In this document: one piece after another, positions 42,852 through 62,694 of the stretch | Layout: every line of letters starts with the position of its first letter | How positions within the stretch are numbered: position 1 is the first letter of the stretch | NCBI RefSeq assembly: GCF_000143415.4 | Contig: NW_003314262.1 | Coordinates: forward strand, 5,096,397-5,160,396 | Direction of reading: 5' to 3' | DNA length: 64,000 nt | From: Selaginella moellendorffii | Lineage: Eukaryota > Plantae > Lycopodiophyta | Position numbers and translations under genes: made by a program | The notes under the pieces: model-generated | The model's input: only the letters and a program-made list of their open reading frames with translations | Told to the model about the DNA's origin: nothing | The model's database searches: none

Positions 42852-43971
42852 TGTAAACGACTAATTTTTCCATTCTACTTTAGTCACTTAACCACACCTT
42901 CGACCACTTGGAGGGGTCTCACTCACCACCTCCTTAAGTCCAATTCAGGACTTGGGACTTGTTAGCCCCGAGAATGGCATCCATGCCACTCATCCCTTGC
43001 ACTTAGTCCAAGTGCTCTACGTGTCCGGTCCCAAGACCAACACCCCAAGGTACCACCAACATACTAGCCCGTTACGCTAAGGCCATGCCCCTTTACCTTG
43101 GTCATACCGGTAGTCTAACACCACCTGCATCACAATCCCGTCTCTCAAGGACTGGACCATCCGTCCATGAGTGATCATTCCAGATCCACTCCTTAGCATC
43201 CTTAGGATGCCCGCAGACGTGGGGAATAGCCTTCCCCAATATCCCTTTTCTGGTCCCCACCAAGTCCCTTTCTGCCTATGGCCGTGTTCACCAACACTAC
43301 CACTGGATCGAGGCCCACAGGCCCGACCACTAAGTCCCACGGTCCTCTGGGACTTCCTCACCACACGACTGTGTCCTTGGTCACTACCCCAGAGGACTAC
43401 TCTTCTTCCTTTCCACAGTCTGGGCCTTTGGGACAACATTTCGGAACACTGTGGCCTTGCGCGAGCCACTTGGGTACTCTCCCCACCTTTCGCCTTTAGG
43501 TGCTCTAGCCATGGGCTTAGAGCGAGGTTCCGTTGAGCCACACCTGGTATCCAAGTAGGTAGTGCCACCCACACTTGGACTGGGAGCATCGGCCAGTCGA
43601 TCTCCTAGGGGAACTAGAGCCGGCTCTTGAACACTTCACCAAGCTACCCCGCTTGTCGGTCCATATTCACTCTAGTCTTGGACTTCCCAGTGGTCAGTTC
43701 ATCACCCAACACTGGGTCTGGCCTTCCTGGGCCAAACTGGCTCCACTGCAGTCCTCCCCCTTACTATACTTTTGGAGCTCACCAAACCCCCCAGGGTCTG
43801 GGAGACAAACGCTTTGGGCTTTCACCCTCTCAGACTCGAACTCGGACTCGGACTCGGACTCAGACTCGGACTTGGACTCGAACTCGGACTCGAGCTCGGG
43901 CTCAGTCTCAGCCTCGGCCTCGGTCTCGGTCTCGGTCCCGGTCCCGGTCCCGGTCTCGGTCCCGGTCTCGA

Positions 43972-44005
<34 letters not shown>

Positions 44006-47000
44006 AGTCCCGGTCTCGGTCTCGACCTCAGACTCCATCTCGGGTCCTTCTCGGACTCCATCTCGGACTCCATCTCGGACTCCGTCTCGGTCCATCTCGG
44101 ACTCCATCTCGGACTTCGTCTCGGTCCATCTCGGACTCCATCTCGGGTCCATCTCGAACTCCATCTCAGACTCCATCTCGGGTCTATCTCGGACTCCATC
44201 TTGGACTCCATCTCGGACTCCATCTCGGGTCCATCTCGGACTCCATCTCGGGTCCATCTCGAACTCCATCTTGGTCCACCTCGGACTCCATCTCAGACTC
44301 CATCTCGGACTCCATCTCGGGTCCATCTCGGACTCCATCTCGGACACTTCCATGTGTCATGTGTTGATCCTTTTTGGGTCCCTTTTTGGAGCCTTGCTTA
44401 TTGCTTGCTTCGTGCTCGCTCCTTGAGCACTTTGTTGAGAGTTCCACTCCCACTCTCAACCTTCCAAGTTAAAGCTTTTAGTCCAAACGTGTTACACTCA
44501 TTTGGGCTTTCGTTTCGGCCACTACCATGTGGCACCCTTTCCGGCTCCACTTTGGGGCCTAGCGATTTTGTGTCTCACAACTCCACCACCCATAGACGAA
44601 GTTCAATGTCCTCATCGAACAGTAAACCATTTTATAAAGTAACACCCGCATGTGTTACCATTTCCATCCTTGGCACCTAGCCAATATTTGTCAATGGTTT
44701 GACATTGAAGGCTCACCATGCCTTTTCCATATTCGTCAATGGTTTGACACCAAAGGCTCACCATGCCTTGCCCATCCTCTAAGGAGGATAGTCTCTCCAA
44801 CTTAGAGACTCATTTGACCACCTAGGGTGGTTTGCTCCTTTTTATTGGTTCAGTTCTCGCTAAACCCGTTAGAGACACCCTCTCTAACTCAATTCCACTA
44901 CTCATTCTTGAGTAGTCACAGATTCCATTGATCTACCTTTGCACTTTGGAACGTTTACTTTTGACTTCTTGAAGTCAATTTCCTAGGTGTCTCCGACACC
45001 TTGCCTTGCACATTTTGTGCAACTCCACTTCCCCTCCTAGAAAGTTCTCTACTCGAGGGCACCCTCATCCTCTTTTCCATTTTTGTGCCACCATTGGCAT
45101 TATGTTCCATTTATCATTATTTGTGCTAGGGTTGTCCATAGCCCTATTTTTTGGCTACTTAGTTGCTCCCTCATTTGGAGCCTTTCCTTTGCCAAATTGG
45201 AGCACTTGGGAATCCATCCTTGGAAGTCCACTTCTTTTTCCGCAATCTGTTAGCATCAAACACATGAGTGTTCCTTGGCTAACTTTGCCACTTGGATTCT
45301 TTCCAATGGATTCCACGGCCCTATCATGGGCACTCGTCTTTTGCTCCTATCCTTGGATTGTTGCACTAAGCAACATAGGATCATTACCTCCCTCTTTGAG
45401 GTAATCTTTTGGTTCCATAGTAAAGGATCTGCTTTGCCCAGACTAGGGTGTTCACCCCTAGTAAGTCTCCCCAACTATTCTAGGCTCTCTTCCCAGCCCA
45501 ACCTTGTGACCCACCCATGGGCCTGTCTCTGGAGACTATTTTCTTGAACTCATAATACTATTGTATTGTAGTAGTTCATTTCCCTTAGATGTCTTTCCCA
45601 CTTAGTCACCTTGACTAAGCCACACCTTTATCAATAGTTCAAATCAACACTTTGAACTAGGAATCATATTCCTTAACCCAAACAAAGACCTTATCTTTGT
45701 TTAACTATAAGATCACCTAGTAATCTCATCTTGACCCCTTAATAGGTCTACCAATAGGAATTAGGTCTTCCAGACCTTACTAAGTTGTTGACTATGACCC
45801 CGGGGGCATCCCCCACACTTGGCGGTGCGCCCAAGCTAGCCCTTCCGGCCAAGGATCCATAGCAACTGAAACTAGGTGTCCCCATCTCATTCACCACGTC
45901 CTTGGTGCCCTTTGCACCAAAGTGTTCAAGTTATATATGCCGAGCTTTCACTCTAAGGAATCTAACCGTGCATCACGACTCCGGGGCATCCCCCGCTTGG
46001 CGGTGTGCCCAAGCCAATCTCCTCATTGAGAGTCTATGACCACCGAAATATGAGTGTCCTCATATTCCAAACCATCACCACGCCCTAGTGATTTGGGACT
46101 CGAACCCAAGCACTAGAGGGTCGGGACTCGAACCCAACCTCCAAATATGCATCTACGGACGGCATCCCCCAGGATGCCTGGCGTGACTCTCCACGCTGGT
46201 GCACCAACTTTTACTCAAAGCGCGCTATAAATCACAGCTTAGGAACCTAGTTCCTCCACACTGCCAAGTCCTCTCACTTGACAAGTCTGTGATCATGCAT
46301 GGACTCCTCCATGCTTGGCCCCATGGCCCACCCCTTTTGAAGTTATCACCTTCAACTAGGGTATTTGTTCCTCTGACTTGCCAATCTCACTTGGCAAGTC
46401 TTCCGACCACTGTAACATGGTTCCTGCACAAGCGTGAAAGCCCTTGATCATCAACTTTCGTTCAAAGCCCTCTCTTTGAACACTCGGGAACTATTTCCCT
46501 AACCTTAATAGCCTTGCCTCATGGCAAGCTTTAAGACCACGCTTCTGCTGCGCCACTCTAATTTCATGCTTTCCTTGAACCATTTACGCTTAGCCTTTCT
46601 AGGTACTAAGCTACCTAGAATCGTCTTTGGGAACCTTGAAGGAACTCTGTCCCTTAGCTTGCTAAGGCTTCCCTTTTCGCAAGCTTTCTAGTTATTATAT
46701 AGTCTAATATGGACTATTCCATATTTTAGACTCTCCATGGCATCACGGTTGCTAGCAACAACACCCTCGAGCCCCCATTTGATTCTCCATTCCCAACTGG
46801 CATAACTACTCTTGGTTATGCCCTTCGATTCCTATGGTTTGGTTCTATCCCCTTACTACTTGCTTTTGGCTTCACACCTTTCCTTCGGTCATTCTCCTCC
46901 CGACTAGAAGGATAGCTTTGCACTTCCTATCATGCCTTAGCAAGTATTTTTAGGGATGAACCTACCTGATAGCCTAGGGAGTGGTTCCTCAATCCAAGTA

Positions 47001-49756
47001 TGCTCACCCTATAATCCCACACACCGGGATTACATTGTTGCTTATGGGCCCTTACATGCCCATCACTAGCCTTGCCAAAATTCCATTTTTGGCTTTGTCC
47101 AATTCGAGTAGACAATCTTCTTTTGTCTCCGCCACCTTGGACATTTGGATAACACCTTCTATCCATCATTCGTTAGGGACTTAGTCCCTTGGGCCTTATC
47201 TATTGCCCTTGCCACATCAAACACCACCTCCTGGTGTTCTAGAGTGTTCGGGTGTCCTAATGATGGCTTCCTTGACAATGAGTATTTCCTTTTATGACAT
47301 TGACTTACTATATCGCAACATAAGCAACTTATCCCCCGTAAGGGTATATCCAACTTCCCTATGCCATTAAGAAGGCTTGGGTAGCTACCTTCTACCCATT
47401 TAACCAATTATTTTGCACCTCTCGCTTAGTTGCCTCATAGTTGTCAAGTCCTACAACTCATTGCTGGTGCTTCCACACCTCCATCATTATCTGTTGCACC
47501 ACACTCTAATTGCATGCTCTGCAGCTTAGGCTATGCCATTCCCATTTCCATTGGGATTCCTTTGGCAAGGGGTTCTCATGAACCCACCAACATAGCCTCA
47601 AGGTATCACACCTTGGCACATTTGGTGTCTCCACACCATCGGCTCCACGAGCCTACCTCTATAACACTTTTTTTTTGTGTCTAAGTCTTTGCCAAGACCA
47701 ATACCGCTCTTTCTCATGCCAACCATCTGTTAACACGGCACTATAGAGGTCATACACAACTTTGTGTCAAAGTTGTTTCCTTTGCCATCGATGAGATACC
47801 CTCTGTTCTCATCCTTGGATCCTATGATCCCCCCCCCCCCCCATCCTTCGTGGGGTACAACACACCTCAGTCCAAATGCTCCTATCAATCCTTTTAGGAC
47901 CATTCCTTGACTCTACTTGAGTCATCCAGCAGTTTTGGACTTGGTTAATCCACAGATCCGTAAGGTCCTACTTGTGAGGCACTAACTCACTGGAATGCAC
48001 TTTTTGCATTCCTGTCTTACTCAAAAGGACTATTTTCACAAGTGTTACTCTGACACTTGATTTTGTTCTCTGGGGGAAACCTTTGCCCCTTAGGACTACT
48101 TTGTCCATGTGATGAGAATACCAACTCATCTCTAAGTACACCCCCCAACTCCTTGGGTTGTTCCAACATTTATTAAAGGTAGCCCCGGCTACCATTTCAA
48201 GGACTTGCGTCCTCTTCCATATTTGACCTCCCACGATTATTACTTCTGGTCTCACATTCATGAGCACCAACCTCAATTATATGAGGATAATCTTGTGACT
48301 CCTTTATTGTTTTGGAGTCTACATCTTTCCCATGATCCCAGCTATAGTTGTTTACCACAACTACCTGAGCTAGTTTGCTGAGTCAAACGCTCATCCGGAT
48401 CACATCCTCAACTCTTTGAGGGAAACCTTATACCATTCCCAAGATCCTGAAGTCGTTCCCTTACTGGCCCTTTTCCATCCACCACATCGCGCACAAGTTC
48501 ACACATGAACTTGAGCGGAGAGTCATGTCCTCTCGACATGCTACTCGTCGAGGATAGGTCCACATTTAGGACCTTCCAATTCCAATACAAGTGGTGATAT
48601 ACTTGGCCACCAATAATAGTCGGACTAAGGAACAGCTCCGATACCAAGTTGTAAGAGACTAATTTTTCCATTCTACTTTAGTCACTTAACCACACCTTCG
48701 ACCACTTGGAGGGTCTCACTCACCACCTCCTTAAGTCCAATTCAGGACTTGGACTTGCTAGCCCCGAGAATGGCATCCATGCCACTCATCCCTTACACTT
48801 AATCCAAGTGCTCCACGTGTCCGGTCCCAAGATCGACACCCCAAGGTACCACCGACATATTAGCCCGTTACGCTAAGGCCATGCCCCTTTACCTTGGTCA
48901 TACCGGTGGTCTAACACCACCTGCATCACAATCCCGTCTCTCAAGGACTGGACCATCTGTCCATGAGTGATCATTCCAGATCCACTCCTTAGCATCCTTA
49001 GGATGCCCGCAGACGTGGGGAATAGCCTTCCCCAATATCCCTCTGTCAGTCCCCACTAAGTCCCTTTCTGCCCCTGGTCGTGTTTGCCAACACTACCACT
49101 GGATCGAGGCCCATAGGCCCGACCACTAAGTCCCACGGTCCTCTGGGACTTCCTCACCACACGACTGTGTCCTTGGTCACTACCCTAGAGGACTGCTCCT
49201 CTTCCTTTCCACAGTCTGGGCCTTTGGGACAACATTTCGGAACACTGTGGCCTTACGCGAGCCACCTGGGTACTCTCCTCGCCTTCTGCCCTTGGGTGCT
49301 CTAGCCATGGGCTTAGAGCGGGTTCCGTTGAGCCACACTAGGTATCCAAGTAGGTAGTGCCACCCACACTTGGACTGGGAGCATCGGCCAGTCGATCTCC
49401 CGGGGGAACTAGAGCCGGCTCTTGAACACTTCACCAAGCTACCCCGCTTGTCGGTCCGTGTTCACTCTAGTCTTGGACTTCCCAGTGGGCAGCTCATCAC
49501 CCAACACTGGGTCCGGCCTTCCTGGGCCAAACTGGCCTTTCCTGGCCAAACTGGCTCCACTGCAGTCCTCCCCCTTACTATACTTTTGGAGCTCACCAAA
49601 CCCCCCAGGGTCTGGGAGACGAACGCTTTGGGCTTTCACCCTCTCAGGCTCCGGACTCGGACTTGGACTCGGACTCGGACTCGGACTCGGACTCGGATTC
49701 GGACTCGGACTCGGGCTCGGGCTCGGTCTCGGCCTCGGCCTCGGTCTCGGTCCCGA

Positions 49757-49794
<38 letters not shown>

Positions 49795-52700
49795 CCGGTC
49801 TCGGTCTCGACTTCGGACTCCATCTCAGACTCCATCTCGGACTCCATCTCAGACTCCATCTTGGGTCCATCTCGGGTCCATCTCGGACTCCATCTCGGAC
49901 TCCATCTCGGGTCCATCTCGGACTCCAACTCGGGTCCATCTCGGGTCCACCTCGGACTCCATCTCGGACTCCACTTCGGACTCCAACTCGGGTCCATCTC
50001 GGGTCCACCTCGGACTCCACTTCGGACTCCATCTCGGACTCCATCTCGGGTCCATCTTGGACTCCACTTCGGACTCCAACTCGGGTCCATCTCGGACTCC
50101 AACTCGGGTCCATCTCGGACTCCAACTCGGGTCCATCTCGGACTCCAACTCGGGTCCATCTCGGACTCCACTTCGGGCTCCAACTCGGGTCCATCTCGGA
50201 CTCCACTTCGGACTCCAACTCGAGTCCATCTCGGGTCCACCTCGGACTCCACTTCGGACTCCATCTCGGACTCTCCCACGTGTCATGTGTTGGTCCTTTT
50301 GGGTCCCTTTTTGGAGCCTCGCCTTTTGCTCGCTTCGTGCTCGTTCCTCGAGCACTTCGTTGGGAGTTCCACTCCCGCTCTTGACTTTTCAAGTCGGAGC
50401 TTTTGGTCCAAACGTGTTACGCTCGTTTGGCTCTCGCTTCGGCCACTACCATGTGGCACCCTTCCGGCTCCACTTTGGGGCCTAGGGATTTTGTGTCTCA
50501 CAACTCCACCACCCATAGACAAAGTTCGATGTCCTCATCGAACGGTAAACCCTTTCATAAAGTAACACCTACACGTGTTACCATTTCCATCCTTGGCACC
50601 TAGCCAATCTTTGTCTATGGTTTGACACCAAAGGCTCACCATGCCTTGTCCATCCTTTAAGGAGCGTAGTCTCTCCAACTTAGAGACTGATTGGACCACA
50701 TGTAATGGTTCTCTCCTTTTATTGGTTTAGTCCTCGCTAAACCTCTTAGAGACCCTTCTCTAAGTCAATCCCACTACTCCTTCTCGAGTAATCTCAATTT
50801 CCATCGTTATAACCTTTGCACTTTGGAACTTTGAATTCTGACTTCTTGGAGTCAATTTCCTAGGTGTCTCCGACACCTTGCCTTGCACCTTTTGTGCAAC
50901 TCCACTTCCCATCCTAGGAAGTTCTCTACTCGAGGGCACCATCATCCTCTCTTCTATTTCGTGCCAAAGTTCCAGTTATCATACTTTGTGCTAGGGCTGT
51001 TCATGGCCCTATCATTTGGCTACCTTACCACTCCCTCCCTTTGGAGCTTCCACTTTCGCCAAATCGGAGCATTTCGGAATCCCTCCTTGGAAACACACTT
51101 CCTTTCCTGCAACTTGTTAGCGTCCAACACATTAGTGTTCCTCACCTAACTTTGTCACTTGGATTCCTCCCAAGGGATTCCACGGCCCTATCTTGGCCAC
51201 TCATCTTTTGCTCCTATCCGTTGATTGTTGCACCAAGCAACATCGAATCTCTACCTCCCTCCTTGAGGTATTGTTTCGGTTCCATAGCAAAGACTCTTCT
51301 TTGCCAAGTCCGGAGGATGTTCACCCCTAGTACGTCTCTTTAGCATCTTCTGCTATGGGCTCTATCCACGGCCCAACTTCGTGACCCTCCCATGGGTCTT
51401 TCATAGAGACTACTTTCCTCGGACTCACTATGCCATCTCACGGACATAGTTTATTTCCCTTAGGTGCTCTTCCCACTTGGTCATCACGACCAAGCCACAC
51501 CACCTTAAACAGTTTAATTTCAACATTTTGAACCAGGAACTTCATTCCTTAGCCAACCAAGGACCTTGTCCTTATCTGGCCATAAGATCACCTAGTGATC
51601 TCACCTTGGCACCTTAACAGAGTTGCCAAGAGGTACCTGGTCTTCTAGACCTCCAAGTTGTTGACTATAACCCCGGGGGCATCCCCCACACTTGGCGGTG
51701 CACCCAAGCCAGCCCTTACGGCCAAGGGTTCATAGCAACTGAGATTAGGTGTCCCCATCTCACTCACCACGACCTTGGTGCCACTTGCACCAAAGCGTTC
51801 AAGTTAGATATGCTGAGCTTTCACACTAAGCAATCTAACCGTGCATCACGACTCCGAGGCATCCCTCGCTTGGCGGTGTGCCCAAACTAGTCTCCCCACT
51901 GAGAGTCCATGACCACCGAAATATGAGTGTCCTCATATTCCAAACCATCACCACGCCCTAGTGATTTGGGACTCGAACCCAAGCACTAGAGGGTCGGGAC
52001 TCGAACCCAACCTCCGTATATGCATCTACGGATGGCATCACACAAGATGCCTGGCGTGACTCCCCACGCCGGTGCACCAACTTATTTTTAAAGCGCACTA
52101 CAAATCACAGCTTAGGAACTTAGTTCCTCCACACTGCCAAGTCCTCTCACTTGACATGTCTGTGATCATGCATGGACTCCTCCATGCTTGGCCCCATGGC
52201 CCACCCCTTTTGAAGTTATCACCTTCAACTAGGGTATTTGTTCCCCCGACGTGCCAATCTCGCTTGGCAAGTCCTCCGACCACTGTAACATGGTTCCTGC
52301 ATAAGCGTGAAAGTTCTTGACTATCGACTTTCGTTCAAAGCCCTCTCTTTGAACACTCGGGAACTACTTCCCTAACCTTGATAGCCTTGCCTCATGGCAA
52401 GCTTCAAGACCACGCTTCTGCTGCGCCACTCTGATTTCACGCGTTCCATGAACCATTTACACTTGGCCTTTCTAGGTACTAAGCTACCTAGAATCGTCTT
52501 TGGGAACCTTGAAGGAACTCTGTCCCTCAGCTTGCTAAGGCCTCCCTTTTTGCAAGCCTTCAAAATGCCACATAGTCTAATATGGACAATTCCATATTTT
52601 AGACTCTCCATGGCATCACGGTTGCTAGCGGCAACACCCTCGAGCCCCCACTTGATTCTCCACTCCCAGCTGGTATAACCAACTTTGGTTATGCCCTTTG

Positions 52701-55700
52701 ATTCTTATGGTTCGGTTCTATCCCCTTACTTCTTGCTTTTTTGGCTTCACACCTTTCCTTTGGTCATTCTCCTCCAGACCAGGAGGATATCTTTGCACTT
52801 TCTATCACGCTTTAGCAAGTATTCTTAGGGATGAACCTACCCAATAGCCTAGGGAGTGGTTCCTCAATTCGGGTATGCTCACCTTATAATCCCACACACC
52901 GGGATTACATTGTTACTTATGGGCCTTTACATGCCCATCACTAGCCTTGCCAAAATTCCATTTTTGGCTTTGTCCAACTCGGGTAGACAGTCCTCTCCTG
53001 TCTCCGCAACCTTGGACATTTGGATAGCACCTTCTATCCATCATTCGCTAGGGACTTAGTCCCTTGGGCTTTATCCATTGCCCTCGTGACATCAAACACC
53101 ACCTTCTGGTGTTCTAGAGTGTCCGAGTGTCCCAATGATAGCTTTCTTGACAATGAGTATTTCCTTTTATGACATTGACTTACTATATCGCAACACAAGC
53201 AACTTATCCCCCGTAAGGGTATATCCAACTTCCTTATGCTATTAAGAAGTCTTGGGCAGCTACCTTCTACCCGTTTAACCAGTTATTTTGCACCTCTTGC
53301 TTAGTTGCCTCATAGTTGTCAAGTCCTACAACTCATTGCTTGGTGCTTTCACACCTCCATCATTATCTGGGTCACCACACTCCAACTGCATGCTCTGCAG
53401 CTTAGGCTATGCCATTCCCATTTCCATTGGGATTCCTTTGGCAAGGGGTTCTCATGAACCCACCAACATAGCCTTAAGGTATCACACCTTGGCACATTTG
53501 GTGTCTCCACACCATCGGCTCCACGAGCCTACCTCTATGACATTTCCCCTTCGTGTCTAAGTTTTTGCCAAGACCAACACCGCTATTTCTCATGCCAACC
53601 ATCCGTTAGCACTGCCCCATAGAGGTCACACACAACTTTATGTCAAAGTTGTTTTCTTCTGGGAACACCTTTCCCATAACTTTAGCATGGCACATTTTGC
53701 CATCGATGAGATACCCTCTGTTCTCATCCTTGGATCCTATGATCCCCCCCCATCCTTTGTGGGGTACAACACACCTCAGTCCAAATGCTTCCATCAGTCC
53801 TTTTAGGACCATCCCTTGACTCTACTTGAGTCATCCAGCAGTTTTGGACTTGGTTAATCCACAGACCCGTAAGGTCCTACTTGTGAGGCACTAGCTCACT
53901 GGAATACACTTCTTGCATTCCTGTCCTACTCAAAAGGACTATTTTCACAAGTGTTACTCCGACACTTGATTTTGTTCTCTGGGGGCAACCTTTGCCCCTT
54001 AGGACTACTTTGTCCATGTGATGAGAACACCAACTCATCCACTTAATACACCCCCAACTCCTGGGGTTGTTCCAGCATTTATTAGAGGTAGCCCCGGCTA
54101 CCTTTTCAAGGACTTGAGTCCTCTTCCGTATTTGACCTCCCACGGTCATTACTTCTGGTCTCACATTCATGAGCACCAACCTCAACTATATGAGGAAAAT
54201 CTTGTGACTCCTTTATTGCTTTGGAGTCTTTATCTTTCCCGTGATCCCAACTGTAGTTGTTTACCACAACTACATTAGCCAGTTTGCTAAGTCAAACGCT
54301 CATCTGGATCACATCCTCAACTCTTTGAGGAAAACCATATACTGTTCCCAAGATCCCAAAGTCATTCCATTATTGGCCCTTTTCTATCCACCACCTCGTC
54401 TACAAGTTCACACATGAACTGTAATGGAGAGCCATGTCTTCCCGACTTGCTACTCCTCAAGGATAGGCCCACTCCTCGGACCTTCCGATGCCAACACTAG
54501 TGGTGATATACTTGAGCACCAATAAAAGTCGGACTAAGGAACAGCTCTGATACCAAATTGTAAGCAACTAATTTTTCCATTCCACTTTAGTCACTTAACC
54601 ACACCTCTGACCACTTGGAGGAGTCTCATTCACAACCTCCATAAGTCCAATCCAGGACTTGGGACTTGCTAGCCCCGAGAATGGCATCCATGCCACTCAA
54701 CATTTGCACTTGGTCTAAGTGCTCCACGTGTCCGACCCCATGACCAACACTCAAAGGTACCACCGACATAGCAGCCCGTTACGCTAAGGCCATGCCCAAT
54801 CACCTTTGCCACACTAGTAGTCCAATACCACTTGCATCACAGTCTTGGCTCTCCAAGACTAGGCAAACCATCCGTGAGTGGTCATTTCAGATCCACTCCT
54901 TAGCATCCTTAGGATGCCCACCGACAAGGGGAATAGCCTTCCCCAATATCCCTCTGTCAGTCCCCACTAAGTCCCTTTCTGCCCCTGGTCGTGTTTGCCA
55001 ACACTGCCACTGGATCGAGACCCACAGGCCCGACCACTAAGTCCCACAGTCCTCTGGGACTTCCTCACCACACGACTGTGTCCTTGGTCACTACCCCAGA
55101 GGCCTGCTCCTCTTCCTTTCCACAGTCTGGGCCTTTGGGACAACATTTCGGAACACTGTGGCCTTACGCGAGCCACCTGGGTACTCTCCTCGCCTTTTGC
55201 CCTTGGGTGCTCTAGCCATGGGCTTAGAGCGGGTTCCGTTGAGCCACACCAGGTATCCAAGTAGGTAGTGCCACCCACACTTGGACTGGGAGCATCGGCC
55301 AGTCGATCTCCCGGGGGAACTAGAGCCGGCTCTTGAACACTTCACCAAGCTACCCCGCTTGTCGGTCCGTGTTCACTCTAGTCTTGGACTTCCCAGTGGG
55401 CAGCTCATCACCCAACACTGGGTCCGGCCTTCCTGGGCCAAACTGGCCTTTCCTGGCCAAACTGGCTCCACTGCAGTCCTCCCCCTTACTATACTTTTGG
55501 AGCTCACCAAACCCCCCAGGGTCTGGGAGACGAACGCTTTGGGCTTTCACCCTCTCAGGCTCCGGACTCGGACTCAGACTCGGACTCAGACTCAGACTCG
55601 GACTCGGACTCGGACTCGGATTCGGACTCGGACTCGGACTCGGGCTCGGGCTCGGTCTCGGCCTCGGCCTCGGTCTCGATCCCGATCTCGGTCTCGGTCT

Positions 55701-56337
55701 CGGTCTCGGTCCCGGTCTCGGTCTCGACTTCGGACTCCATCTCGGACTCCATCTCGGGTCCATCTCGGGTCCATCTCGGACTCCATCTCGGGTCCATCTC
55801 GGACTCCATCTCGGACTCCAACTCGGGTCCATCTCAGGTCCACCTCGGACTCCACTTCGGACTCCAACTCGGGTCCATCTCGGGTCCACCTCGGACTCCA
55901 CTTCGGACTCCATCTCGGAATCCATCTCGGGTCCATCTTGGACTCCACTTCGGACTCCAACTCGGGTCCATCTCGGACTCCAACTCAGGTCCATCTCGGA
56001 CTCCACTTCGAGCTCCAACTCGGGTCCATCTCGGACTCCACTTCGGACTCCAACTCGAGTCCATCTCGGGTCCACCTCGGACTCCACTTTGGACTCCATC
56101 TCGGACTCTCCCACGTGTCATGTGTTGGTCCTTTTGGGTCCCTTTTTGGAGCCTCGCCTTTTGCTCGCTTCGTGCTCATTCCTCGAGCACGTCGTTGGGA
56201 GTTCCACTCCCGCTCTTGACTTTTCAAGTCGGAGCTTTTGGTCCAAACGTGTTACGCTCGTTTGGCTCTCGCTTCGGCCACTACCATGTGGCACCCTTCC
56301 GGCTCCACTTTGGGGCCTAGGGATTTTGTGTCTCACA
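42852..56337 (-). mobile_element. Tandem family B structure LTR-I-LTR-I-LTR; LTRs 42852-44579, 48650-50502, 54559-56337; about 4-kb non-coding internal regions
   Basis: TG..CA LTRs, reverse-complement PBS at 48635-48646 and 54544-54555, reverse-complement PPT actccaccaccc after 44579 and 50502. Outer flanks TTTAT and AAGAG differ. Confidence 0.9.
43830..44345. repeat. Compound minisatellite inside family B LTRs (TCGGAC/TCGGTC hexamers plus GGACTCCATCTC/GGGTCCATCTC 12/11-mers); also at about 38415-38735, 49650-50270, 55560-56107 and 61398-61730
   Basis: Directly visible arrays with a different copy number in each LTR. Confidence 0.95.
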
Positions 56338-57723
56338 AAGAGATTCCAGCACTTGCTCCTCGCAACCTCCGAAAGGGCCGTCATGAAGCCTTTCATGAGA
56401 GTAAGGACTTTGATTTGGAACATTCTTTTATTCATTCTTGACTTCACTTTTTTTTTTATAGATGTTGCAGAGAGCAGCCATCAGTCTTTTTGGCGGACTA
56501 AGACATTCTTCCCATCCCTCCCTACGGCTACAAATGACGACCTAGAAGAGCTCTCCTCTGCAGCGATGCATAAACAGGTTAGTAAGCATGAATTTTATCT
56601 TCAAGTTCTAATAGTTGATTTTCAAGTTCGCCCTCTATCCCCAACGGCCAGTGTTGGGGAAGTTGTTGTTCTCATTGGGGATTACACACAGCTTTTAGAT
56701 GCTACTAGTCGGGAGCTCTACATGCTTGATCGGTGGATCCATGGTTTGGGTCAGCTCACACCTTATGGGAAGATCGATTTCATCTTTTTCGATCTTCCCG
56801 ATGGGATGCCACCACCGCAGGGGGATACTCCGTCATGGAATGTGTTGCAGGCCCAACACATTTCCCAAGCCTTAAAGGTTTCGAGCAGCTTCATGACATA
56901 CGAGGGTGTGGTTGTCATGATCCTTCCTCGCTCTCTAATGTGGGAAGGCCTTCTCGCACACTTGGCTGACAATGATGATGGATTTGTTGAGTTTTCATCT
57001 GGTTGCCTTCTTTCGAGTATGGCGGTGGACACAAAAGGCACTAGCAGGCAGACGCGAAAGGTGTGTGACTTCTTTATTTATAAATTAACTCTATTCTATT
57101 TTTTTTTCCAGATTTATTCCTGGAACTACCATGCTCTATGCCACATTGGGAACCAGCGTAATGCCACACGAGCTGACGAGCGTGCTGCTCTTGCTTTACC
57201 AGGATATGACAGCTCTACAGACATCATCCCAAATGTGATTGACTCGGATGTTCTTCACCCAGCGTTCCCTAGTTATCGACATCGTTCGGTCACGGCCATG
57301 CAAATCTTGTTGGAGTTATTCTGTCCGCCAAGGGGGATTGTGCTTGATGCTACAGTAGGATTTGGATCAATGGTGCAGGCAGCAAAAGAGACAGGCCCAG
57401 CAGTTTTTGCACTTGAGAAGGAGGGTGCCTTTGAGGACATTCTTATGAGATTTTGCGACAGGTGTTGTTAGTGCTTGAAATAATCTATAATATTTATTCT
57501 CAAATGTTTCTATTTTATTAGGTCTACACTTATCACACACAGTGTTTCAATCCACACACTTGATCTTGATGATATGGATGATCATATGGACCGAAGTCAA
57601 TTCCACTTACCTATTTATGCTGAACGTATGGCACAACATTACATACAACACGAGCCTATAGTGAAGGAGCATTCCACTATACCCATTTCTACTTTTCTGG
57701 ATATGGAAGCAGAAGAAGATTGA
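56338..57723 (+). CDS. 3' part of a spliced gene for a beta-class N4-cytosine/N6-adenine DNA methyltransferase-like protein, 5'-truncated by an LTR
   Basis: Motif IV-like KIDFIFFDLPDG (DLPD at 56791-56802) precedes motif X/I-like HRSVTAMQILLELFCPPRGIVLDATVGFGSMVQAAKETGPAVFALEKE (about 57280-57423). GT-AG introns 56401-56461, probable 56582-56626, 57061-57111 and 57462-57521 keep the frame open to TGA at 57723. Confidence 0.75.
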
Positions 57724-60700
57724 ATATATTCTAATTTTAATATAAATTATATTGTTTAATATATTATTTTCTTTTTTTGTAGACTAAAAGATTAGTTCAT
57801 GTCAAACCAATAATCTACATGAGTTTATGGCATACCTTAAACACCTAGATTTTGTGTTAAAAATTCTTGGTTCGGGACGAACTAAGGTAATGCCATTAAA
57901 CTTTCGCTAGTTAGGGGATTGTATTGACTTCCTTTGACTTTTGTTGACTTTCATTGACTTGAGCTCAGCTCAAAAACTACCCAGCCCCGTATCTCATCGA
58001 TGGCAAAATGTGCCATGCTAAAGTTATGGGAAAGATGTTCCCTAAAAAAGAAAGTAACTTTGGCATAGAGTTGTGTGTGAACACTATAGTGTAGTGTTAG
58101 CGGATAGTTGATATGAGAAACACTATATCGGTCTTGGTAAAGACCTAGACACTAATAAATAGTGTCATAAAGATAAGTTCATGGAGCCAAATGTGCCAAA
58201 GTGTGATACCTTGAGGTTATGTTGATAGGTTCATAAGAACCCCTTACCAAGGGAATCCTAATGGAAATGGGAATGGCATAGCCTATGCTGAAAGGCATGC
58301 GGTTGGAGTGTGGTGACCCAGATAATGATGGAGGTGTGGAAGCACCAAGCAATGAGTTATAGGACTTGACAACTATGAGGCAACTAAGCAAAAGGTGCAA
58401 AATAATTGGTTAAATTGGTAGAAAGTAGCTACCTAAGACTTATGGCATAAAGAAGTTGAATATACCCTTATGGGAGAGAAACTACTTATGTTGCAATATA
58501 GTAAGTCAATGTCGTAAAAGGAATATTTATTGTCAAAGAAGATCATCATTAGGACACCCAAACACTTTAAAACACCAGGAAGTGGTGTTTGGTGTCGTAA
58601 GGGCATTAGATAAGGCCCAAGGGATTAAGTCCCTAGTGAATGATGGATAGGAAGTGCTATCCAAACATCCAAGGTTGTAGAGACGGAAGGAATCTGTCTA
58701 CCTGATTTAGACAAAGCCAAAAATGGGATTTTGGCAAGACTAGTGATGGGCATATGAAGGCCCATAAGTAACAATAGTAATCCCAGTATATGGGATTATA
58801 AAATGAGCATACCCAGATTGAGGAACCACTCCCTAAACTATTGGGTAGGTTCATCCCTATGAATACTTGCTAAGGCATGGTAGAATGTGCAACGCTATCC
58901 TCCTAATCTGGAAGAGAATAACCAAAGGAAACATATGAGGCTAAAAAGCAAGTAGTATTGGGATGGAACTGAATTATAGAAATTGAAGGGCATAACCAAT
59001 GGTGGTTATGCAAGTTGAGAGTGGAGAATCAAGAGGGTGCTTAAGGATGTTGTTACTAGCAACTGCAATGCCATGGAAAGTTTAAAATATGGAATTATCC
59101 ATGTTAAACCATGTGGTGAGTAGAGAGCTTGCAAAGGAGAAGCCTTAGCAAGCTAAGGAACAGAGTTCCTTGAAGGTTCCCAAAGACAATTCTGGGTAGA
59201 TAAGTATTTAGAAAGCCAAGTGTAAATGGTTCCTAGAGTGTGCGAAATCAGAGTGGCACAGCAGAAGCATGGTTTTGAAGCTGGCCATGAAGCGAGGCTA
59301 TCAAGGTTAGGGAAGTAGTTCCCAAGTGTTCAAAGAGAAGGCTTTGAACAAAAGTTGATGATTAAGGACTTTCACATATGCATGAACCATATTACGATGG
59401 CTGAATGACTTGCTAAGTGAGATTAGCAAGTTTGGGGAACAAATCCTCTAGTTGAAGGTTCTAACTTCAAAGGGGTGGCCCATGGGGCCGAGCATGGAGG
59501 AGTCCATGCATGATCACAGACTTGTCAAGTGAGAGGAGTTAGTAGTGCAGAGGAACTAGGTTCCTAAGCTATGATTTATAGCACACTTTAAGTACATATT
59601 GGTGCACCGGTGTGGGGAGTCACACTAGGCATCTAGTGTGATGTCGTCCATAGATGCATATACGGAGGTTGGGTTCAAGTCCCGACCCTTTAATGCTTGG
59701 GTTCGAGTCCCAAATCACTAGAGCATGGTGATGGTTTGGAATATAAGTACACTCATATTTCGGTGGTTATGGATTCTCAATGAGGAGATTGGCTTGGGCA
59801 CACCGCCAAGTGGGGGATGCCTCGGAGTCGTGATGCACGGTTAGATTGCTTAGAGTAAAAGCTCGGCATATTTAACTTGAACATTTTGGTGCAAAGGGCA
59901 CCAAGGATGTAGTGAATGAGATAGGGACACCCAATCTCAGTTGCTATGGATCTTTGGCCAAAAGGGCTAGCTTGGGCACACTGCCAAGTGTGGGGATGCT
60001 CCCGGGGTTATAGTCAACAATTTAAAAAGGGTCTGGAAGATTTAATTCCATTTGGTAGACCTGTTAAGGTGCCAAGTTTATATCACTAGGTGGTCTTATG
60101 GCTAAGCAAGGACAAGGTCTTTGTGAAGTTAAGGAATAAGGTTCCTTTCAAAATGTTGATTTAAATTGTTGATGGTGGTGGGGCTTGGTCAAGGTGACAA
60201 AGTGAGAAGAACACCTAAGGGAAATGTGCCATGTCAATGCAATGGCATAGTAAGTCCAAGGAAAGTAATCTCTATAAAATATCCATGGGAGGGTCTCAAA
60301 GTTGGGCCGTAGATAGAGCCCACAGCAGAAAATGTTAAAGAGACGTACTAGGGGTGAACACCCTCTGGACTTGGCAAAACAAAATGTTTGCTATGGAACC
60401 GAAAGGATACCTCAAGAATGGAAGTAGCGATCCTATGTTACTAGGTGCAATAATCAAGGATAGGAGCAAAAGATTAATGGTTAAGAAAGAGCCAGGGGAA
60501 TCATGGGAAAGAATCCAAATGGCAAATTAGGCCGAGAACACTAATGTGTTGGGTGCTAACGGATTGTAGGAAAGGCAATGTTTTCCCAAGGATGGATTCC
60601 CAATTGTTCCGATTTGGCGAAAGTGGAAGCTTCAATGGGGGGAGTGGTAAAGTAGCCAAATAATAGGGCCATGGGCCGCTCTAGCACAAATTATGATAAT

Positions 60701-62694
60701 TGGAACTTAGTGCCAAAAGTGGCATGATATCGAAGAGGGGATGATGCCCTCAAGTAAAGAACTTCCTAGGATGGGGAAGTGCATGGGCAATGTAAGCTAT
60801 TAGAGACACCTAGGAAATTGACTCTAAGAAGTCAAAATTAAAAGTTTCAAAGTGCAAAGGTTATATTTGAGACTACTTGAGAATAAGTAGTGGAATTGAG
60901 TTAGAGAGGGTGTCTCTAACCGGTTTAATAAGAACTAAACTAATAAAAGGAAAGGACCACCACAAGTGGTCAAATGAGCCTCTAAGTTGGAAAGGCTATG
61001 CTCCTTAGAGGATGGACAAGGCATGGTGAGCCTTCGGTGTCAAACCATTGATGAGTATTGGCTAGATACCAAAGATGGAAAGGGTGATACATGTTAGTAT
61101 TACTTTATAAAATGGTTTGTCGTTCGATGAGGACATCAAACTTCGTCTATGGGTGGTGGAGTTGTGAGACACAAAATCCCTAGGCCTCAAAGTGGAGCCG
61201 AAAGGGTGCCATGTGGTAGTAGTTAAAAGGAAAACCAAACGAGCGTAACACGTTTGGACTAAAAGCTCCAACTTGAAAAGTTGAAAGCGGGAGTGGAACT
61301 CCCAACGAAGTGCTCAAGGAACAAGCATGAAGCAAGCAATAAATGAGTCTCTAGAAAAGGGACACAAGAGGACCAACACATGACACGTGGCAGATTCTGA
61401 GATGGACCCGAGGACCCGAGATGGAGTTCGAGATGGAGTTTGAGATGGACCGAGATGGAGTCCGAGATGGACCCGAGATAGAGTCCGAGATGGACCCAAG
61501 ATGGAGTCTGAGATGGACCGAGACGGAGTCCGAGATGGAGTCTAAGAAGGACCCAAGATGGAGTCCGAGGTTGAGACCGAGACCAGGACTGAGACCGAGA
61601 CCGAGACCAAGACCGAGACCGGGACCGAAACCGGGACCGAGACCGAGACCGAGGCCAAGCTCAAGACCGAGACCGAGCCCGAGCCCGAGCCCGAGTCCGA
61701 GTCTGAGTCCGAGTCTGAGTTCGAGTCTGAGAGGGTGAAAGCCCAAAGTGTTCGTCTCCCAGACCCTAGGGGGAGGATTGTAGTGGAGCCAGTGTTTGGC
61801 CAGGAAAGGCCAGTTTGGCCAGGAAGGCTGTACCCAGTGTTGGGTGATGAGTTGCCCATTGGAAAGTCCAAGACTATAGTGAACACGGACTGACAAGCGG
61901 GGTAGCTTGGTGAAGTGTTCAAGAGCCGGCTCTAGTTCCCCCAGGAGATCGACTGGCCGATGCTCCTAGTCCAAGTGTGGGTGGCACTACCTACTTGGAT
62001 ACTAGGCATGGCTCAATGAAACCTTGCTCTAAGCCCATAGCTAGAGCACCCAAAAGTGGAAGGCAGGGAGAGTACCCAGGAGGCCCATATAGGGCCGCAG
62101 TGTTCCGAAATGTTATCCCAAAGTTTCAGATTGTGGAAAAGAAGATGAGTAGCCCTCTAGTGTGGTGACCAAGGGCATAGTCACATGGTGAGGAAGTCCC
62201 AGAGGACCATGGGACTTAGTGGTCGGGCCTGTCGGCCTTGATCTAGTGGCAGTATTGGCGAGCATGGCCATGGACAAAAAGGGACTTGGTGAGGGCCGGA
62301 AAGGGGATATTGGGGAAGGCTATTCCCCATGTCTATGGGCACTCTAAGGATGCTAAAGAGTGGATCTGGGATGACCACTCATGGACAGAAGGCCCAGTCT
62401 TGGAAAGACGGGGTTGCAATGCAAGTGGTGTTGGATCATCAATGTGACCAAGGTGAATGGGCATAGCCTAGCGTAACGGGCTGGTATGTTGGTGGTACCT
62501 TGGGTGTCGGTCATGGGATCGGACATGTGAAACACTTGGACCAAGTGCAAAGGTTAAGTGGCGAGGATGCCATTCTTGGGGCTAGCAAGCCCAAGTCCAA
62601 AATAGGACTTATGGAGGTTGTGAGTGAGACTCCTCCAAATGGTCGGAAGTGTGGTTAAGTGACTAAAGTAGAATGGAAAAATTAGTCGCTTACA

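What the first reader, a model, noticed from the sequence alone, without database searches (positions are those of the whole stretch)
56338..57988. Intron-containing bacterial-type amino-DNA methyltransferase (N4C/N6A, beta class) gene, apparently carried by a mobile element
Seen: the 712-aa ORF in the track is LTR repeat fused to about 1.4 kb of unique coding sequence. With four short GT-AG introns removed (one only probable), the frame stays open to 57723. It carries IDFIFFDLPDG and, later, HRSVTAMQILLELFCPPRGIVLDATVGFGS..AAKETG...ALEKE. Known: motif IV ([DS]PPY after a hydrophobic strand) placed before motifs X and I (K/R-P..L...LI......G..VLDPF.GSG...AA...GR...G.E) is the beta-class N6_N4_Mtase architecture of prokaryotic restriction-modification systems. 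It is unrelated to plant MET1/CMT/DRM 5mC enzymes, and eukaryotic members are rare (4mC writers are reported from Marchantia and bdelloid rotifers). Inference: the segment lies wholly inside a TSD-bounded LTR element and abuts that element's internal sequence at a sharp junction, so it most likely arrived on a transposon. This would be a transposon-borne, intron-gaining DNA-modification gene that might mark its own copies or host chromatin. DLPD in place of DPPY/SPPY could mean altered chemistry or a catalytically dead protein. This copy lacks its 5' end.
Basis: partly seen in the sequence, partly recalled or inferred. Interest (0 to 1): 0.92.

Follow-up and report, generated by a model that had tools for sequence, protein, structure and literature searches.

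The report
Dead transposon end with methyltransferase-like gene
This stretch is the broken-off last 1.65 kb of a cut-and-paste (Mutator-like) transposon of the spikemoss Selaginella moellendorffii, and it holds the final five exons of the transposon's own passenger gene, which resembles a bacterial/phage DNA amino-methyltransferase with an altered catalytic motif; the gene family is interesting, but this copy is a dead fragment of a family the scan has already met elsewhere in this genome.

Summary
Window 56338-57723 carries five exons separated by four short introns, with IDFIFFDLPDG upstream of a motif X/I-like block. Two introns are confirmed by spliced contigs of a public run.

The genome is Selaginella moellendorffii. 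The gene is not single-copy: at least 40 annotated fragments exist, all from this species where a source is named.

The carrier is not the LTR element. It is a roughly 9.2-kb TIR transposon with 9-bp target-site duplications, read as Mutator-like. It has a SWIM-finger transposase gene on one strand. On the other strand is a ParB/DGQHR-like plus methyltransferase-like gene.

The window holds only the element's 3' 1,651 bp. It is cut at an LTR end, lacks the ParB part, the transposase and the 5' TIR, and its intron-2 acceptor is mutated (AG to AA).

Methyltransferase homology is supported only over motif X/I:
- Pfam PF01555, E 0.0006-0.03, below the curated cut-off
- PHROG, E 5e-6
- NCBIfam, E 1e-5
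- protein-language-model features, 71 of 100 hits PF01555

Two AlphaFold runs failed. Motif IV is D[LM]PD in all subfamilies, not (D/N/S)PP(Y/F/W), yet the domain is under purifying selection (dN/dS 0.18).

Similar ParB-methyltransferase transposon passengers are published for algae. The scan already has at least eight notes on this family on other DNA of this genome.

The parts
56338..56400 (+). Exon a (partial). Coding homology to the family starts here (..KEIPALAPRNLRKGRHEAFHE). Everything upstream of the gene is missing.
   Evidence: BLAST homology to L002 12284, L003 12238 and L004 10711 starts exactly at 56338. The LTR ends ..CTCACA at 56337.
56401..56461 (+). Intron 1, 61 nt, GT..AG.
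   Evidence: Read from the sequence. Annotated paralogs join ..AFHE|NVAESS... No RNA evidence was obtained.
56462..56577 (+). Exon b.
56578..56625 (+). Intron 2, 48 nt. Donor is GT. The acceptor is AA in this copy and AG in paralogs, so the splice site is mutated here.
   Evidence: Spliced contig joint 56577>56626 in run X1. DNA alignment with L002, L004 and L005.
56626..57060 (+). Exon c, the N-terminal half of the methyltransferase-like domain. The motif-IV-like FFDLPDG lies at 56785-56805 (DLPD at 56791-56802).
   Evidence: The best local alignment to a YhdJ profile falls on motifs IV-VI but is not significant.
57061..57111 (+). Intron 3, 51 nt, GT..AG. It is in frame and stop-free, which is why the long ORF reads through it.
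   Evidence: Spliced contig joint in run X1. Gap in the P0029 alignment. Paralog models P0007 and P0027.
57112..57461 (+). Exon d. It holds a motif X-like helix (57256-57321), the motif I block VLDATVGFGS (57340-57369) and the strand-2 acidic FALEKE (57406-57423).
   Evidence: PF01555 E 0.034 for this exon alone. phrog_3008 E 0.0014 for the window ORF. The same region of paralog P0027 gives phrog_3008 E 5.3e-6 and NCBIfam PRK13699 E 1e-5.
57462..57521 (+). Intron 4, 60 nt, GT..AG.
   Evidence: Read from the sequence. A divergent-subfamily model (P0012) joins the same two exons. No RNA evidence.
57522..57723 (+). Exon e with stop TGA at 57721-57723. The acidic C-terminal tail is conserved between subfamilies (..YAE.MAQ..EPIV.EH.TI..F.D..AEED).
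57724..57966 (+). 3' untranslated and subterminal region of the transposon. It holds four TTGACT-containing 10-nt repeats (57924-57959) and one TGAGCTCA palindrome (57960-57967).
   Evidence: In L005 the palindrome occurs only just inside element termini: 8 matches against 0.56 expected.
57967..57988 (-). 3' terminal inverted repeat. Its reverse complement is GGGGCTGGGTAGTTTTTGAGCT. The last base of the element is 57988.
   Evidence: The same end occurs in L002 (13941), L004, L005 (13871) and L006. It pairs with the 5' TIR GAGCCCGGGTAGGTTTTGAGCT of full copies.

Best explanation
Window 56338-57988 is the 3'-terminal 1,651 bp of a roughly 9.2-kb Mutator-like (MULE) DNA transposon of Selaginella moellendorffii.

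Full copies have ~22-bp imperfect terminal inverted repeats and 9-bp target-site duplications. Clusters of the palindrome TGAGCTCA sit just inside both ends. A multi-exon transposase gene with CxxH and SWIM motifs lies on the minus strand. On the plus strand is a multi-exon passenger gene. Its product has an N-terminal ParB/DGQHR-like module (..VIDGNHRWLAF..) and a C-terminal, circularly permuted (beta-class-like) SAM-methyltransferase-like domain.

The window keeps only the last five exons (the methyltransferase-like domain and an acidic tail), the 3' UTR, the subterminal repeats and the 3' TIR. This copy is dead:
- It is cut at the end of an LTR, with no matching duplication.
- It lacks the ParB-like part, the transposase and the 5' TIR.
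- Its intron-2 acceptor is mutated.

Inferred mechanism for intact elements: the passenger protein is made by the transposon for its own benefit. It recognises the element's DNA through the ParB-like module, and the terminal TGAGCTCA palindromes are candidate sites. Its methyltransferase-like domain keeps the SAM-binding motif I (D-x-x-x-G-x-G-S, with an acidic residue after strand 2). It has D[LM]PD where amino-methyltransferases need (D/N/S)PP(Y/F/W).

I therefore think it acts mainly as a SAM- or DNA-binding, non-canonical or inactive module (about 55%) rather than as a standard 6mA/4mC writer (about 25%).

Shown: the anatomy, the copies, the termini, splicing of two introns, purifying selection, and profile matches over motif X/I. 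Inferred: the fold of the N-terminal half, the binding sites, and the activity.
For: Species and copy number: 25 + 31 hits, all named ones Selaginella moellendorffii.

Shared 3' end and 5' extension in other copies.

TIRs and duplications: L005 4663-13871 is flanked by ACATGAATT on both sides. L002 is flanked by ATTTACCA[A/T].

Transposase-side motifs: SWIM CxCx15CxH (Pfam E 0.32), SCEFHW, WIHFDH.., and IS256-family E 0.14.

Methyltransferase-like domain:
- PF01555: E 0.034, 0.014 and 0.00063, always profile positions ~169-218 of 221
- phrog_3008: E 5.3e-6
- phrog_67: E 3.5e-5
- NCBIfam PRK13699: E 1e-5
- ESM-Atlas features: 71 of 100 best hits PF01555, score 0.95, 193 of 256 features shared
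- hhalign to a YhdJ profile: motif I only, E 0.0075
- Foldseek on a poor model: beta-class DNA methyltransferases rank first, not significant

ParB-like module:
- phrog_1033: E 0.022 and 0.012
- DGQHR: E 0.014

Selection: dN/dS is 0.18 between subfamilies and 0.5-0.9 among young copies. D[LM]PDG is conserved at 40% overall identity.

Splicing: two joints in run X1.

Decay of this copy.
Against: - No Pfam match reaches the gathering score (best 20.2 bits against 26.7).
- The N-terminal half with DLPD has no significant match to anything. hhalign probability is only 5%.
- Both AlphaFold2 runs gave pLDDT 33-35, so the fold is not shown.
- The transposase has no Pfam MULE-domain hit, so the superfamily call rests on TSD length, TIRs and short motifs.
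- The ParB-like call rests on E~0.01 matches over ~40 residues.
- Three deep RNA runs gave essentially no reads, though the organism's presence in them was not checked.
- A stand-alone paralog in a gene-dense region (L008) leaves open that the transposon captured a host gene.
Confidence: 0.85

Rival explanations
1. The methyltransferase-like gene is a host gene, or a fragment of one, that a MULE captured in Pack-MULE fashion. The stand-alone locus LOC9661604 would be the donor lineage, and the transposon copies would be passengers with no role for the element.
For: L008 10001-13177 encodes an apparently intact ParB-like plus methyltransferase-like protein (P0029/P0166). It is packed between ordinary host genes. 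No TIR-like motif and no transposase homolog lies within 10 kb. Plant MULEs are known to capture host genes (established knowledge).
Against: - The stand-alone paralog is only 40-47% identical to the transposon copies.
- Divergent transposon subfamilies keep the gene under purifying selection, with dN/dS 0.18.
- ParB plus DNA-methyltransferase passenger genes are reported in algal transposons of other superfamilies (PMC12477816; 10.1101/2025.02.11.637652). That fits an element-serving gene, and domestication in the opposite direction is equally possible.
Confidence: 0.15
2. The protein is an active DNA N6-adenine or N4-cytosine methyltransferase with an unusual catalytic motif, and it marks the transposon's own DNA or host chromatin.
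For: The SAM-binding motif I and the acidic residue after strand 2 are intact and conserved. There is long-term purifying selection. All profile hits are to DNA methyltransferases rather than RNA or protein methyltransferases, apart from one weak Erm hit.
Against: - D[LM]PD lacks both the second proline and the aromatic residue that stacks on the flipped base, in all three subfamilies.
- Comparable substitutions go with inactivity in METTL14-type proteins and in DIRS1 methyltransferase domains (PMC4738411).
- No methylation data were examined here.
Confidence: 0.25
3. The gene belongs to, and arrived with, the LTR retrotransposon that surrounds it.
For: The segment lies inside a TSD-bounded LTR element and touches an LTR on one side and LTR-element internal sequence on the other.
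Against: - Five other copies have the same 3' end and sit in different flanks. Full copies have their own TIRs and 9-bp duplications.
- The other LTR-element copies in the window (44580-48646, 50503-54557) lack the segment.
- The inner LTR array has non-matching flanks, TTTAT against AAGAG.
Confidence: 0.02
4. The resemblance to methyltransferases is a chance motif match, and the domain has another fold or function.
For: Significant matches cover only ~50 residues. There is no Pfam gathering-level hit. hhalign probability is 5%. AlphaFold failed. PDB sequence searches gave nothing significant.
Against: - Independent libraries and independent family members all hit the same region of DNA-methyltransferase profiles, with E down to 5e-6.
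- Language-model features point to PF01555 in 71 of 100 hits.
- The predicted strand/helix order and the colinear, non-significant alignment of the N-terminal half to motifs IV-VI agree.
Confidence: 0.1

Closest known systems
ParB-like plus DNA methyltransferase accessory proteins of algal DNA transposons (Ectocarpus Sola1-1_Ec32, PMC12477816; green and red algal cases cited there and in 10.1101/2025.02.11.637652)
   Same: Large TIR transposon. The accessory gene lies on the strand opposite the transposase. The predicted product has a ParB-like module plus a prokaryote-type N4C/N6A DNA-methyltransferase domain. The authors propose it binds and modifies its own element.
   Different: Here the host is a land plant (a lycophyte) and the carrier is Mutator-like, not Sola1 or Plavaka. 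The catalytic motif IV is altered to D[LM]PD. No sequence relationship to the algal proteins was tested here.
Bacterial and phage beta-class amino-methyltransferases, Pfam PF01555 N6_N4_Mtase (e.g. E. coli YhdJ, M.BceJIV, CcrM, M.PvuII, M.RsrI), often fused to ParB-like domains in phages and plasmids
   Same: The motif X/I block is at the C-terminal end, downstream of a hydrophobic strand plus DxPxG. Profile matches are to DNA-methyltransferase families. The architecture with an N-terminal ParB-like module is the same.
   Different: Scores are below the Pfam cut-off. Motif IV lacks PP(Y/F/W). The gene has many spliceosomal introns. There is a long middle region and an acidic tail with no match.
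Maize MuDR and other two-gene MULEs (mudrA transposase plus mudrB helper)
   Same: TIR element with 9-bp target-site duplications. It carries a transposase and a second, lineage-specific gene inside the TIRs.
   Different: The second gene is unrelated to mudrB. The two genes here diverge from the middle of the element. The transposase is too divergent for the Pfam MULE model.
Eukaryotic 4mC writers: Marchantia MpDN4MT1a/b (10.1101/2021.02.12.428880) and bdelloid rotifer N4CMT (PMC8885841)
   Same: Prokaryote-type amino-methyltransferase domains sitting in eukaryotic genomes.
   Different: Those are host genes with demonstrated 4mC activity. No sequence link to them appeared in a profile search of 1.84 billion representatives. 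This family is transposon-borne and its motif IV is altered.
Methyltransferase domain of DIRS1-type retrotransposons (PMC4738411)
   Same: A transposon-encoded amino-methyltransferase-like domain judged catalytically inactive because of active-site substitutions.
   Different: The DIRS1 domain is PCIF1-like (group 2, not permuted). It is embedded in a retrotransposon polyprotein with RT/RNase H and a tyrosine recombinase. Here it is a separate intron-containing gene in a TIR DNA transposon.

Membership tests
Pfam PF01555 N6_N4_Mtase (beta-class DNA amino-methyltransferases) | Whole-protein score at or above the Pfam gathering cut-off (26.7 bits) | tested here: not met
   Scores were 12.4-20.2 bits: window ORF E 0.15, exon d E 0.034, L004 ORF E 0.014, P0027 E 0.00063, P0029 E 0.055.
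Pfam PF01555 N6_N4_Mtase (beta-class DNA amino-methyltransferases) | SAM-binding motif X/I block (..P..L...I......VLDPF.GSG...AA...GR...G.E) matched by DNA-methyltransferase profiles | tested here: met
   phrog_3008 E 5.3e-6. phrog_67 E 3.5e-5 and 3.6e-5. NCBIfam PRK13699 E 1e-5. The hit is always on the same ~50 residues. hhalign to a YhdJ profile gave E 0.0075 on motif I. ESM features gave 71 of 100 hits PF01555.
Pfam PF01555 N6_N4_Mtase (beta-class DNA amino-methyltransferases) | Catalytic motif IV (D/N/S)-P-P-(Y/F/W/H) after strand 4 | tested here: not met
   The motif is DLPD in the window and the main family, DLPD in the L001/L006 subfamily, and DMPD in P0029.
Pfam PF01555 N6_N4_Mtase (beta-class DNA amino-methyltransferases) | Circularly permuted order: motif IV-VIII, then the target-recognition region, then motifs X and I-III | tested here: inconclusive
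   Motif I lies ~165 residues downstream of FFDLPDG. The best local alignment of the N-terminal half to a YhdJ profile falls on motifs IV-VI, but with E 0.42 for a single comparison. The predicted secondary structure fits.
Pfam PF01555 N6_N4_Mtase (beta-class DNA amino-methyltransferases) | Class-I SAM-methyltransferase fold | tested here: inconclusive
   AlphaFold2 gave pLDDT 33.0 and 35.4. Foldseek on the poor model ranks M.BceJIV, M1.HpyAVI and TTHA0409 first, but at E 0.012 and TM 0.22.
Pfam PF01555 N6_N4_Mtase (beta-class DNA amino-methyltransferases) | SAM-dependent methyl transfer to adenine N6 or cytosine N4 in DNA | not testable with these tools
   This needs a biochemical assay or modification-aware sequencing.
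Mutator-like elements (MULE / MuDR superfamily) | Terminal inverted repeats | tested here: met
   5' GAGCCCGGGTAGGTTTTGAGCT against the reverse complement of the 3' end, GGGGCTGGGTAGTTTTTGAGCT: 18 of 22 match. Seen in L002, L003, L005 and L006. Only the 3' TIR is in the window.
Mutator-like elements (MULE / MuDR superfamily) | Target-site duplication of 9-11 bp | tested here: met
   L005 has ACATGAATT on both sides. L002 has ATTTACCAA and ATTTACCAT. Only two complete copies could be checked.
Mutator-like elements (MULE / MuDR superfamily) | MURA-type DDE transposase (Pfam MULE PF10551, often with a C-terminal SWIM finger) | tested here: inconclusive
   No PF10551 hit. SWIM E 0.32, with a visible CxCx15CxH. 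IS256-family transposase E 0.14 over the CxxH region. ESM features were uninformative.
ParB/Srx (DGQHR) superfamily N-terminal module | Conserved DG(N/Q)HR core matched by ParB-type profiles | tested here: inconclusive
   phrog_1033 E 0.022 (L002) and 0.012 (P0166). TIGR03187 DGQHR E 0.014. Pfam is silent. This module is absent from the window copy.
Eukaryotic 4mC writers (Marchantia DN4MT1, rotifer N4CMT) | Detectable sequence relationship | tested here: not met
   A profile search of 1.84 billion representatives found 31 proteins. Every one with a named source is S. moellendorffii.
Eukaryotic 4mC writers (Marchantia DN4MT1, rotifer N4CMT) | The motif IV serine usually associated with N4C enzymes (my own recollection; a search of the Marchantia preprint found no SPPY or DPPY string) | tested here: not met
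   Motif IV starts with D in the window copy and in all three subfamilies.
Algal transposon ParB-methyltransferase accessory genes | ParB-like plus DNA-methyltransferase domains in one protein, encoded inside a TIR transposon on the strand opposite the transposase | tested here: met
   The architecture is seen in full copies L002 and L005. The published description is in PMC12477816. Sequence kinship with the algal proteins was not tested.

The most novel reading that the evidence does not exclude
The D[LM]PD variant is an active DNA-modifying enzyme. The ParB-like module guides it to the TGAGCTCA palindromes at the element's ends. A land-plant Mutator transposon would then write its own prokaryote-type mark (6mA, 4mC or something else) on itself, to escape or steer host silencing. 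The stand-alone paralog LOC9661604 would be a domesticated host version of that system.
Probability: 0.12. Interest if true: 0.85.

Novelty: new member of a known kind. Interest (0 to 1): 0.42.

Why it matters
Transposons that carry their own DNA-modification-type genes could manipulate epigenetic silencing from the inside. Such ParB-methyltransferase passengers have so far been described for algal transposons. I found no paper describing one in a land plant or in a Mutator-like element.

The Selaginella family shows long-term purifying selection on a domain whose catalytic motif is altered. That makes it a good test case for whether these passengers are enzymes or pseudo-enzymes.

This particular window adds only a dead 3' fragment. 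Its value is in confirming the element's 3' terminus, the intron structure and the splicing, not in offering a testable gene.

Tried and rejected
- AlphaFold2 on the window ORF (read through intron 3) with a 10-row family alignment gave pLDDT 33. The same on P0029:345-627 with a 12-row alignment gave pLDDT 35. Both are unusable. Foldseek on the second model gave nothing significant.
- PDB sequence searches with a single sequence and with two profiles gave nothing significant.
- hhalign of the family profile against a narrow YhdJ profile matched motif I only, at 5% probability. The YhdJ homolog search returned only close relatives (at least 65% identity), so the comparison profile was shallow.
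- The profile search of 1.84 billion representatives found no relative outside Selaginella. I therefore could not reproduce earlier notes that ferns or liverworts carry the gene.
- Pfam, NCBIfam and ESM features on the transposase pieces gave no firm family.
- RNA: three 2026 raw-read runs gave 0-1 reads, and the organism's presence in them was not checked, so this says nothing about silence.
- DIRS1-type origin was considered and rejected: there is no RT or tyrosine recombinase, and the element has TIRs.
- LINE-like 5' truncation was considered and rejected: the truncation point here is an LTR end, and full copies have TIRs and duplications.
- The window's exons were never joined into one protein. 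The natural read-through ORF, single exons and database proteins were used instead.

Full report
WHAT IS THERE. The 712-aa ORF 55333-57471 is real. Its first ~335 residues translate the end of an LTR that is full of 12-nt tandem repeats. From 56338 on the sequence is unique in the window.

Reading the three frames and comparing with annotated paralogs gives this model:
- exon a 56338-56400
- intron 1 56401-56461
- exon b 56462-56577
- intron 2 56578-56625
- exon c 56626-57060
- intron 3 57061-57111
- exon d 57112-57461
- intron 4 57462-57521
- exon e 57522-57720, stop at 57721-57723

FFDLPDG is at 56785-56805 and VLDATVGFGS at 57340-57369.

Contigs of public run X1 carry the spliced joints 56577>56626 and 57060>57112. 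Intron 3 is also an exact gap in the alignment with a 40%-identical paralog. In this copy intron 2 ends AA, where L002, L004 and L005 have AG. Introns 1 and 4 rest on sequence and gene models only.

WHOSE GENOME, HOW MANY COPIES. The first protein search returned 25 proteins at 50-97% identity, all Selaginella moellendorffii hypothetical proteins on different scaffolds. A profile search of 1.84 billion representative proteins returned 31. Every one with a named source is again S. moellendorffii. One ENA protein of unknown origin (P0039) is a tandem array of a motif-I-like fragment.

THE CARRIER. Six further loci were fetched for the family (five family copies plus a stand-alone paralog, described below). 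In L002, L003 and L004 the homology to window 56338-57988 is 93-97% and stops at the same base as 57988. L005 and L006 end at the same terminus. In L002, L003 and L005 homology continues ~7.5 kb further upstream.

The ends of full copies are inverted repeats. The 5' end reads GAGCCCGGGTAGGTTTTGAGCT and the reverse complement of the 3' end reads GGGGCTGGGTAGTTTTTGAGCT. L005 4663-13871 is flanked by ACATGAATT on both sides, and L002 by ATTTACCA[A/T]. The palindrome TGAGCTCA occurs only just inside element termini: 8 matches in L005 against 0.56 expected.

The left half of the element carries a multi-exon minus-strand gene. It has WIHFDH.., SCEFHW (CxxH) and a C-terminal CxCx15CxH SWIM finger. 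Database support is weak: SWIM E 0.32, IS256-family transposase E 0.14, and no Pfam MULE hit.

Nine-base duplications, these TIRs and these motifs make me call it Mutator-like, with about 80% confidence in the superfamily. That it is a TIR DNA transposon is firm.

The window contains only the 3' TIR and no other part of the element.

THE WINDOW'S NEST. Self-comparison and end sequences show an outer LTR element in minus orientation, 38183-62694, bounded by TCTAT duplications. Inside it lie:
- a 3.3-kb element with ~790-bp inverted ends (39555-42847)
- a plus-oriented LTR-internal-LTR-internal-LTR array of the same LTR family (42850-56337), whose flanks do not match (TTTAT against AAGAG)
- the transposon fragment (56338-57988)
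- the outer element's internal sequence (57989-61161)

About 840 bp of that internal sequence, and all of the transposon's 5' part, are missing. So 57988/57989 is a genuine insertion junction of the transposon into the outer LTR element. 56337/56338 is an LTR end brought there by insertion followed by recombination or deletion. The LTR elements are neighbours, not carriers.

THE PROTEIN. Support for a methyltransferase is real but local.
- PF01555 matches always fall on profile positions ~169-218 of 221 and stay below the curated cut-off: E 0.15-0.00063, at most 20.2 bits against 26.7.
- PHROG DNA-methyltransferase families give E 5.3e-6 and 3.5e-5.
- NCBIfam PRK13699 gives E 1e-5.
- Protein-language-model features place the window ORF among PF01555 clusters in 71 of the 100 best hits, with score 0.95 and 193 of 256 features shared.
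- hhalign against a YhdJ profile aligns motif I only (E 0.0075, probability 5%).
- PDB sequence searches are not significant.
- Two AlphaFold2 runs failed (pLDDT 33 and 35), because the only homologs are close paralogs. Foldseek on the poor model puts beta-class DNA methyltransferases first, but at E 0.012 and TM 0.22.

The N-terminal half has no significant match. Its best local alignment to the YhdJ profile does fall on motif IV-VI, with DLPD under DPPY, but at E 0.42 for one comparison.

Motif IV is DLPD or DMPD in all three subfamilies. Motif I and the acidic residue after strand 2 are conserved.

In full copies the same gene starts with a low-complexity region and a ..VIDGNHRWLAF.. module. 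That module weakly matches ParB-like and DGQHR profiles (E 0.012-0.022). Pfam is silent on it.

SELECTION. These values are summed exon by exon, without joining. dN/dS is 0.18 between the main family and the L006 subfamily, where dS is about 1.3-1.4 and near saturation. It is 0.5-0.9 among young copies. The domain has been kept by selection along transposon lineages, while individual insertions decay.

A STAND-ALONE PARALOG. LOC9661604 (P0029/P0166; L008 10001-13177) encodes both modules. It is 40-47% identical to the transposon version. It sits between ordinary host genes, with no TIR-like motif or transposase homolog within 10 kb. It is either a domesticated copy or the lineage from which the transposon took the gene. 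I could not decide which.

WHAT IS KNOWN. Iyer et al. (PMC4738411) list several independent acquisitions of permuted amino-methyltransferases by eukaryotes. They note inactive methyltransferase domains in DIRS1 elements and ParB-linked Dam-type enzymes in chlorophytes, and they say land plants have few such enzymes.

The Ectocarpus transposon survey (PMC12477816) describes a Sola1 element with a ParB-like plus N4C/N6A DNA-methyltransferase protein on the strand opposite the transposase. [quoted passage not shown] The Bostrychia paper (10.1101/2025.02.11.637652) describes related accessory genes in Plavaka and Chondrus Mutator elements.

The Marchantia 4mC writers are host genes that cluster with prokaryotic N4C enzymes. 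Nothing here links them to this family. I found no paper on a land-plant transposon of this kind.

EARLIER NOTES OF THIS SCAN. After I had reached the MULE/ParB reading, the findings index showed at least eight notes on the same family on other DNA of this genome, several with follow-ups reaching the same reading. They gave me the lead to the algal papers, which I then read. Their statement that ferns or liverworts carry the gene was not reproduced by my searches. A note on this window (s1-368848) marks 57860-57990 as a candidate terminus, and I confirm that.

VERDICT. It names the wrong carrier and overstates the enzymology.

This copy is a dead 3' fragment. The family is a new land-plant, Mutator-borne member of a kind of transposon passenger gene already described in algae.

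The window's exons were not joined into a spliced protein for searching or folding.

Noticed in passing
L008 10001-13177 (GL377567.1, LOC9661604; proteins P0029/P0166): A stand-alone, apparently intact ParB-like plus methyltransferase-like paralog, 40-47% identical to the transposon version. It sits in a gene-dense region between host genes, with no TIR-like motif or transposase homolog within 10 kb. It is either a candidate domesticated gene or the donor of the transposon's passenger.
   Followed up: partly
window 42850-56337: Tandem LTR-internal-LTR-internal-LTR array (three LTRs, two internal regions, 85-87% identity). Its outer flanks do not match (TTTAT against AAGAG), so it is the product of unequal or inter-element recombination rather than a single insertion.
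   Followed up: partly
window 38183-62694: Outer LTR element of the same family in minus orientation, bounded by 5-bp duplications TCTAT. About 840 bp of its internal region next to the left LTR are missing.
   Followed up: partly
window 39555-42847 (also 3169-4301): A 3.3-kb element with ~790-bp inverted ends (39892-40677 against 42069-42847). It is 88% similar to 3169-4301 elsewhere in the window. Its nature was not examined.
   Followed up: no
window 55500-56110: The LTR carries long arrays of 12-nt and ~23-35-nt tandem repeats. These create long stop-free frames on both strands and account for the first half of the 712-aa ORF.
   Followed up: no
protein P0039 (ENA, 1038 aa, source organism not given): A predicted protein made of about 12 tandem repeats of a ~85-residue unit. 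The unit contains a motif-I-like fragment (..GFGSMWQAAKKARQRVLRLEIS..) that matches the family profile. It looks like a tandemly amplified fragment of this gene.
   Followed up: no
protein P0023 (RefSeq 'G-type lectin S-receptor-like kinase LECRK1', 411 aa): Its first ~55 residues are 87% identical to exon d of the methyltransferase-like gene (window 57295-57459). This is either a chimeric gene model or an exon captured from a transposon fragment.
   Followed up: no
L005 4663-13871, 16663-19522 (reverse) and 23028-end: Three copies of the transposon from two subfamilies lie within 23 kb of one scaffold, suggesting local clustering or nesting of the family.
   Followed up: no
L004 7732-8634 and L002 1-906: A 900-bp sequence, 99% identical between two scaffolds, abuts a 5'-truncated transposon copy in L004. 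In L002 it lies ~2.6 kb upstream of the full copy. It may be another repeat or a recent segmental duplication.
   Followed up: no
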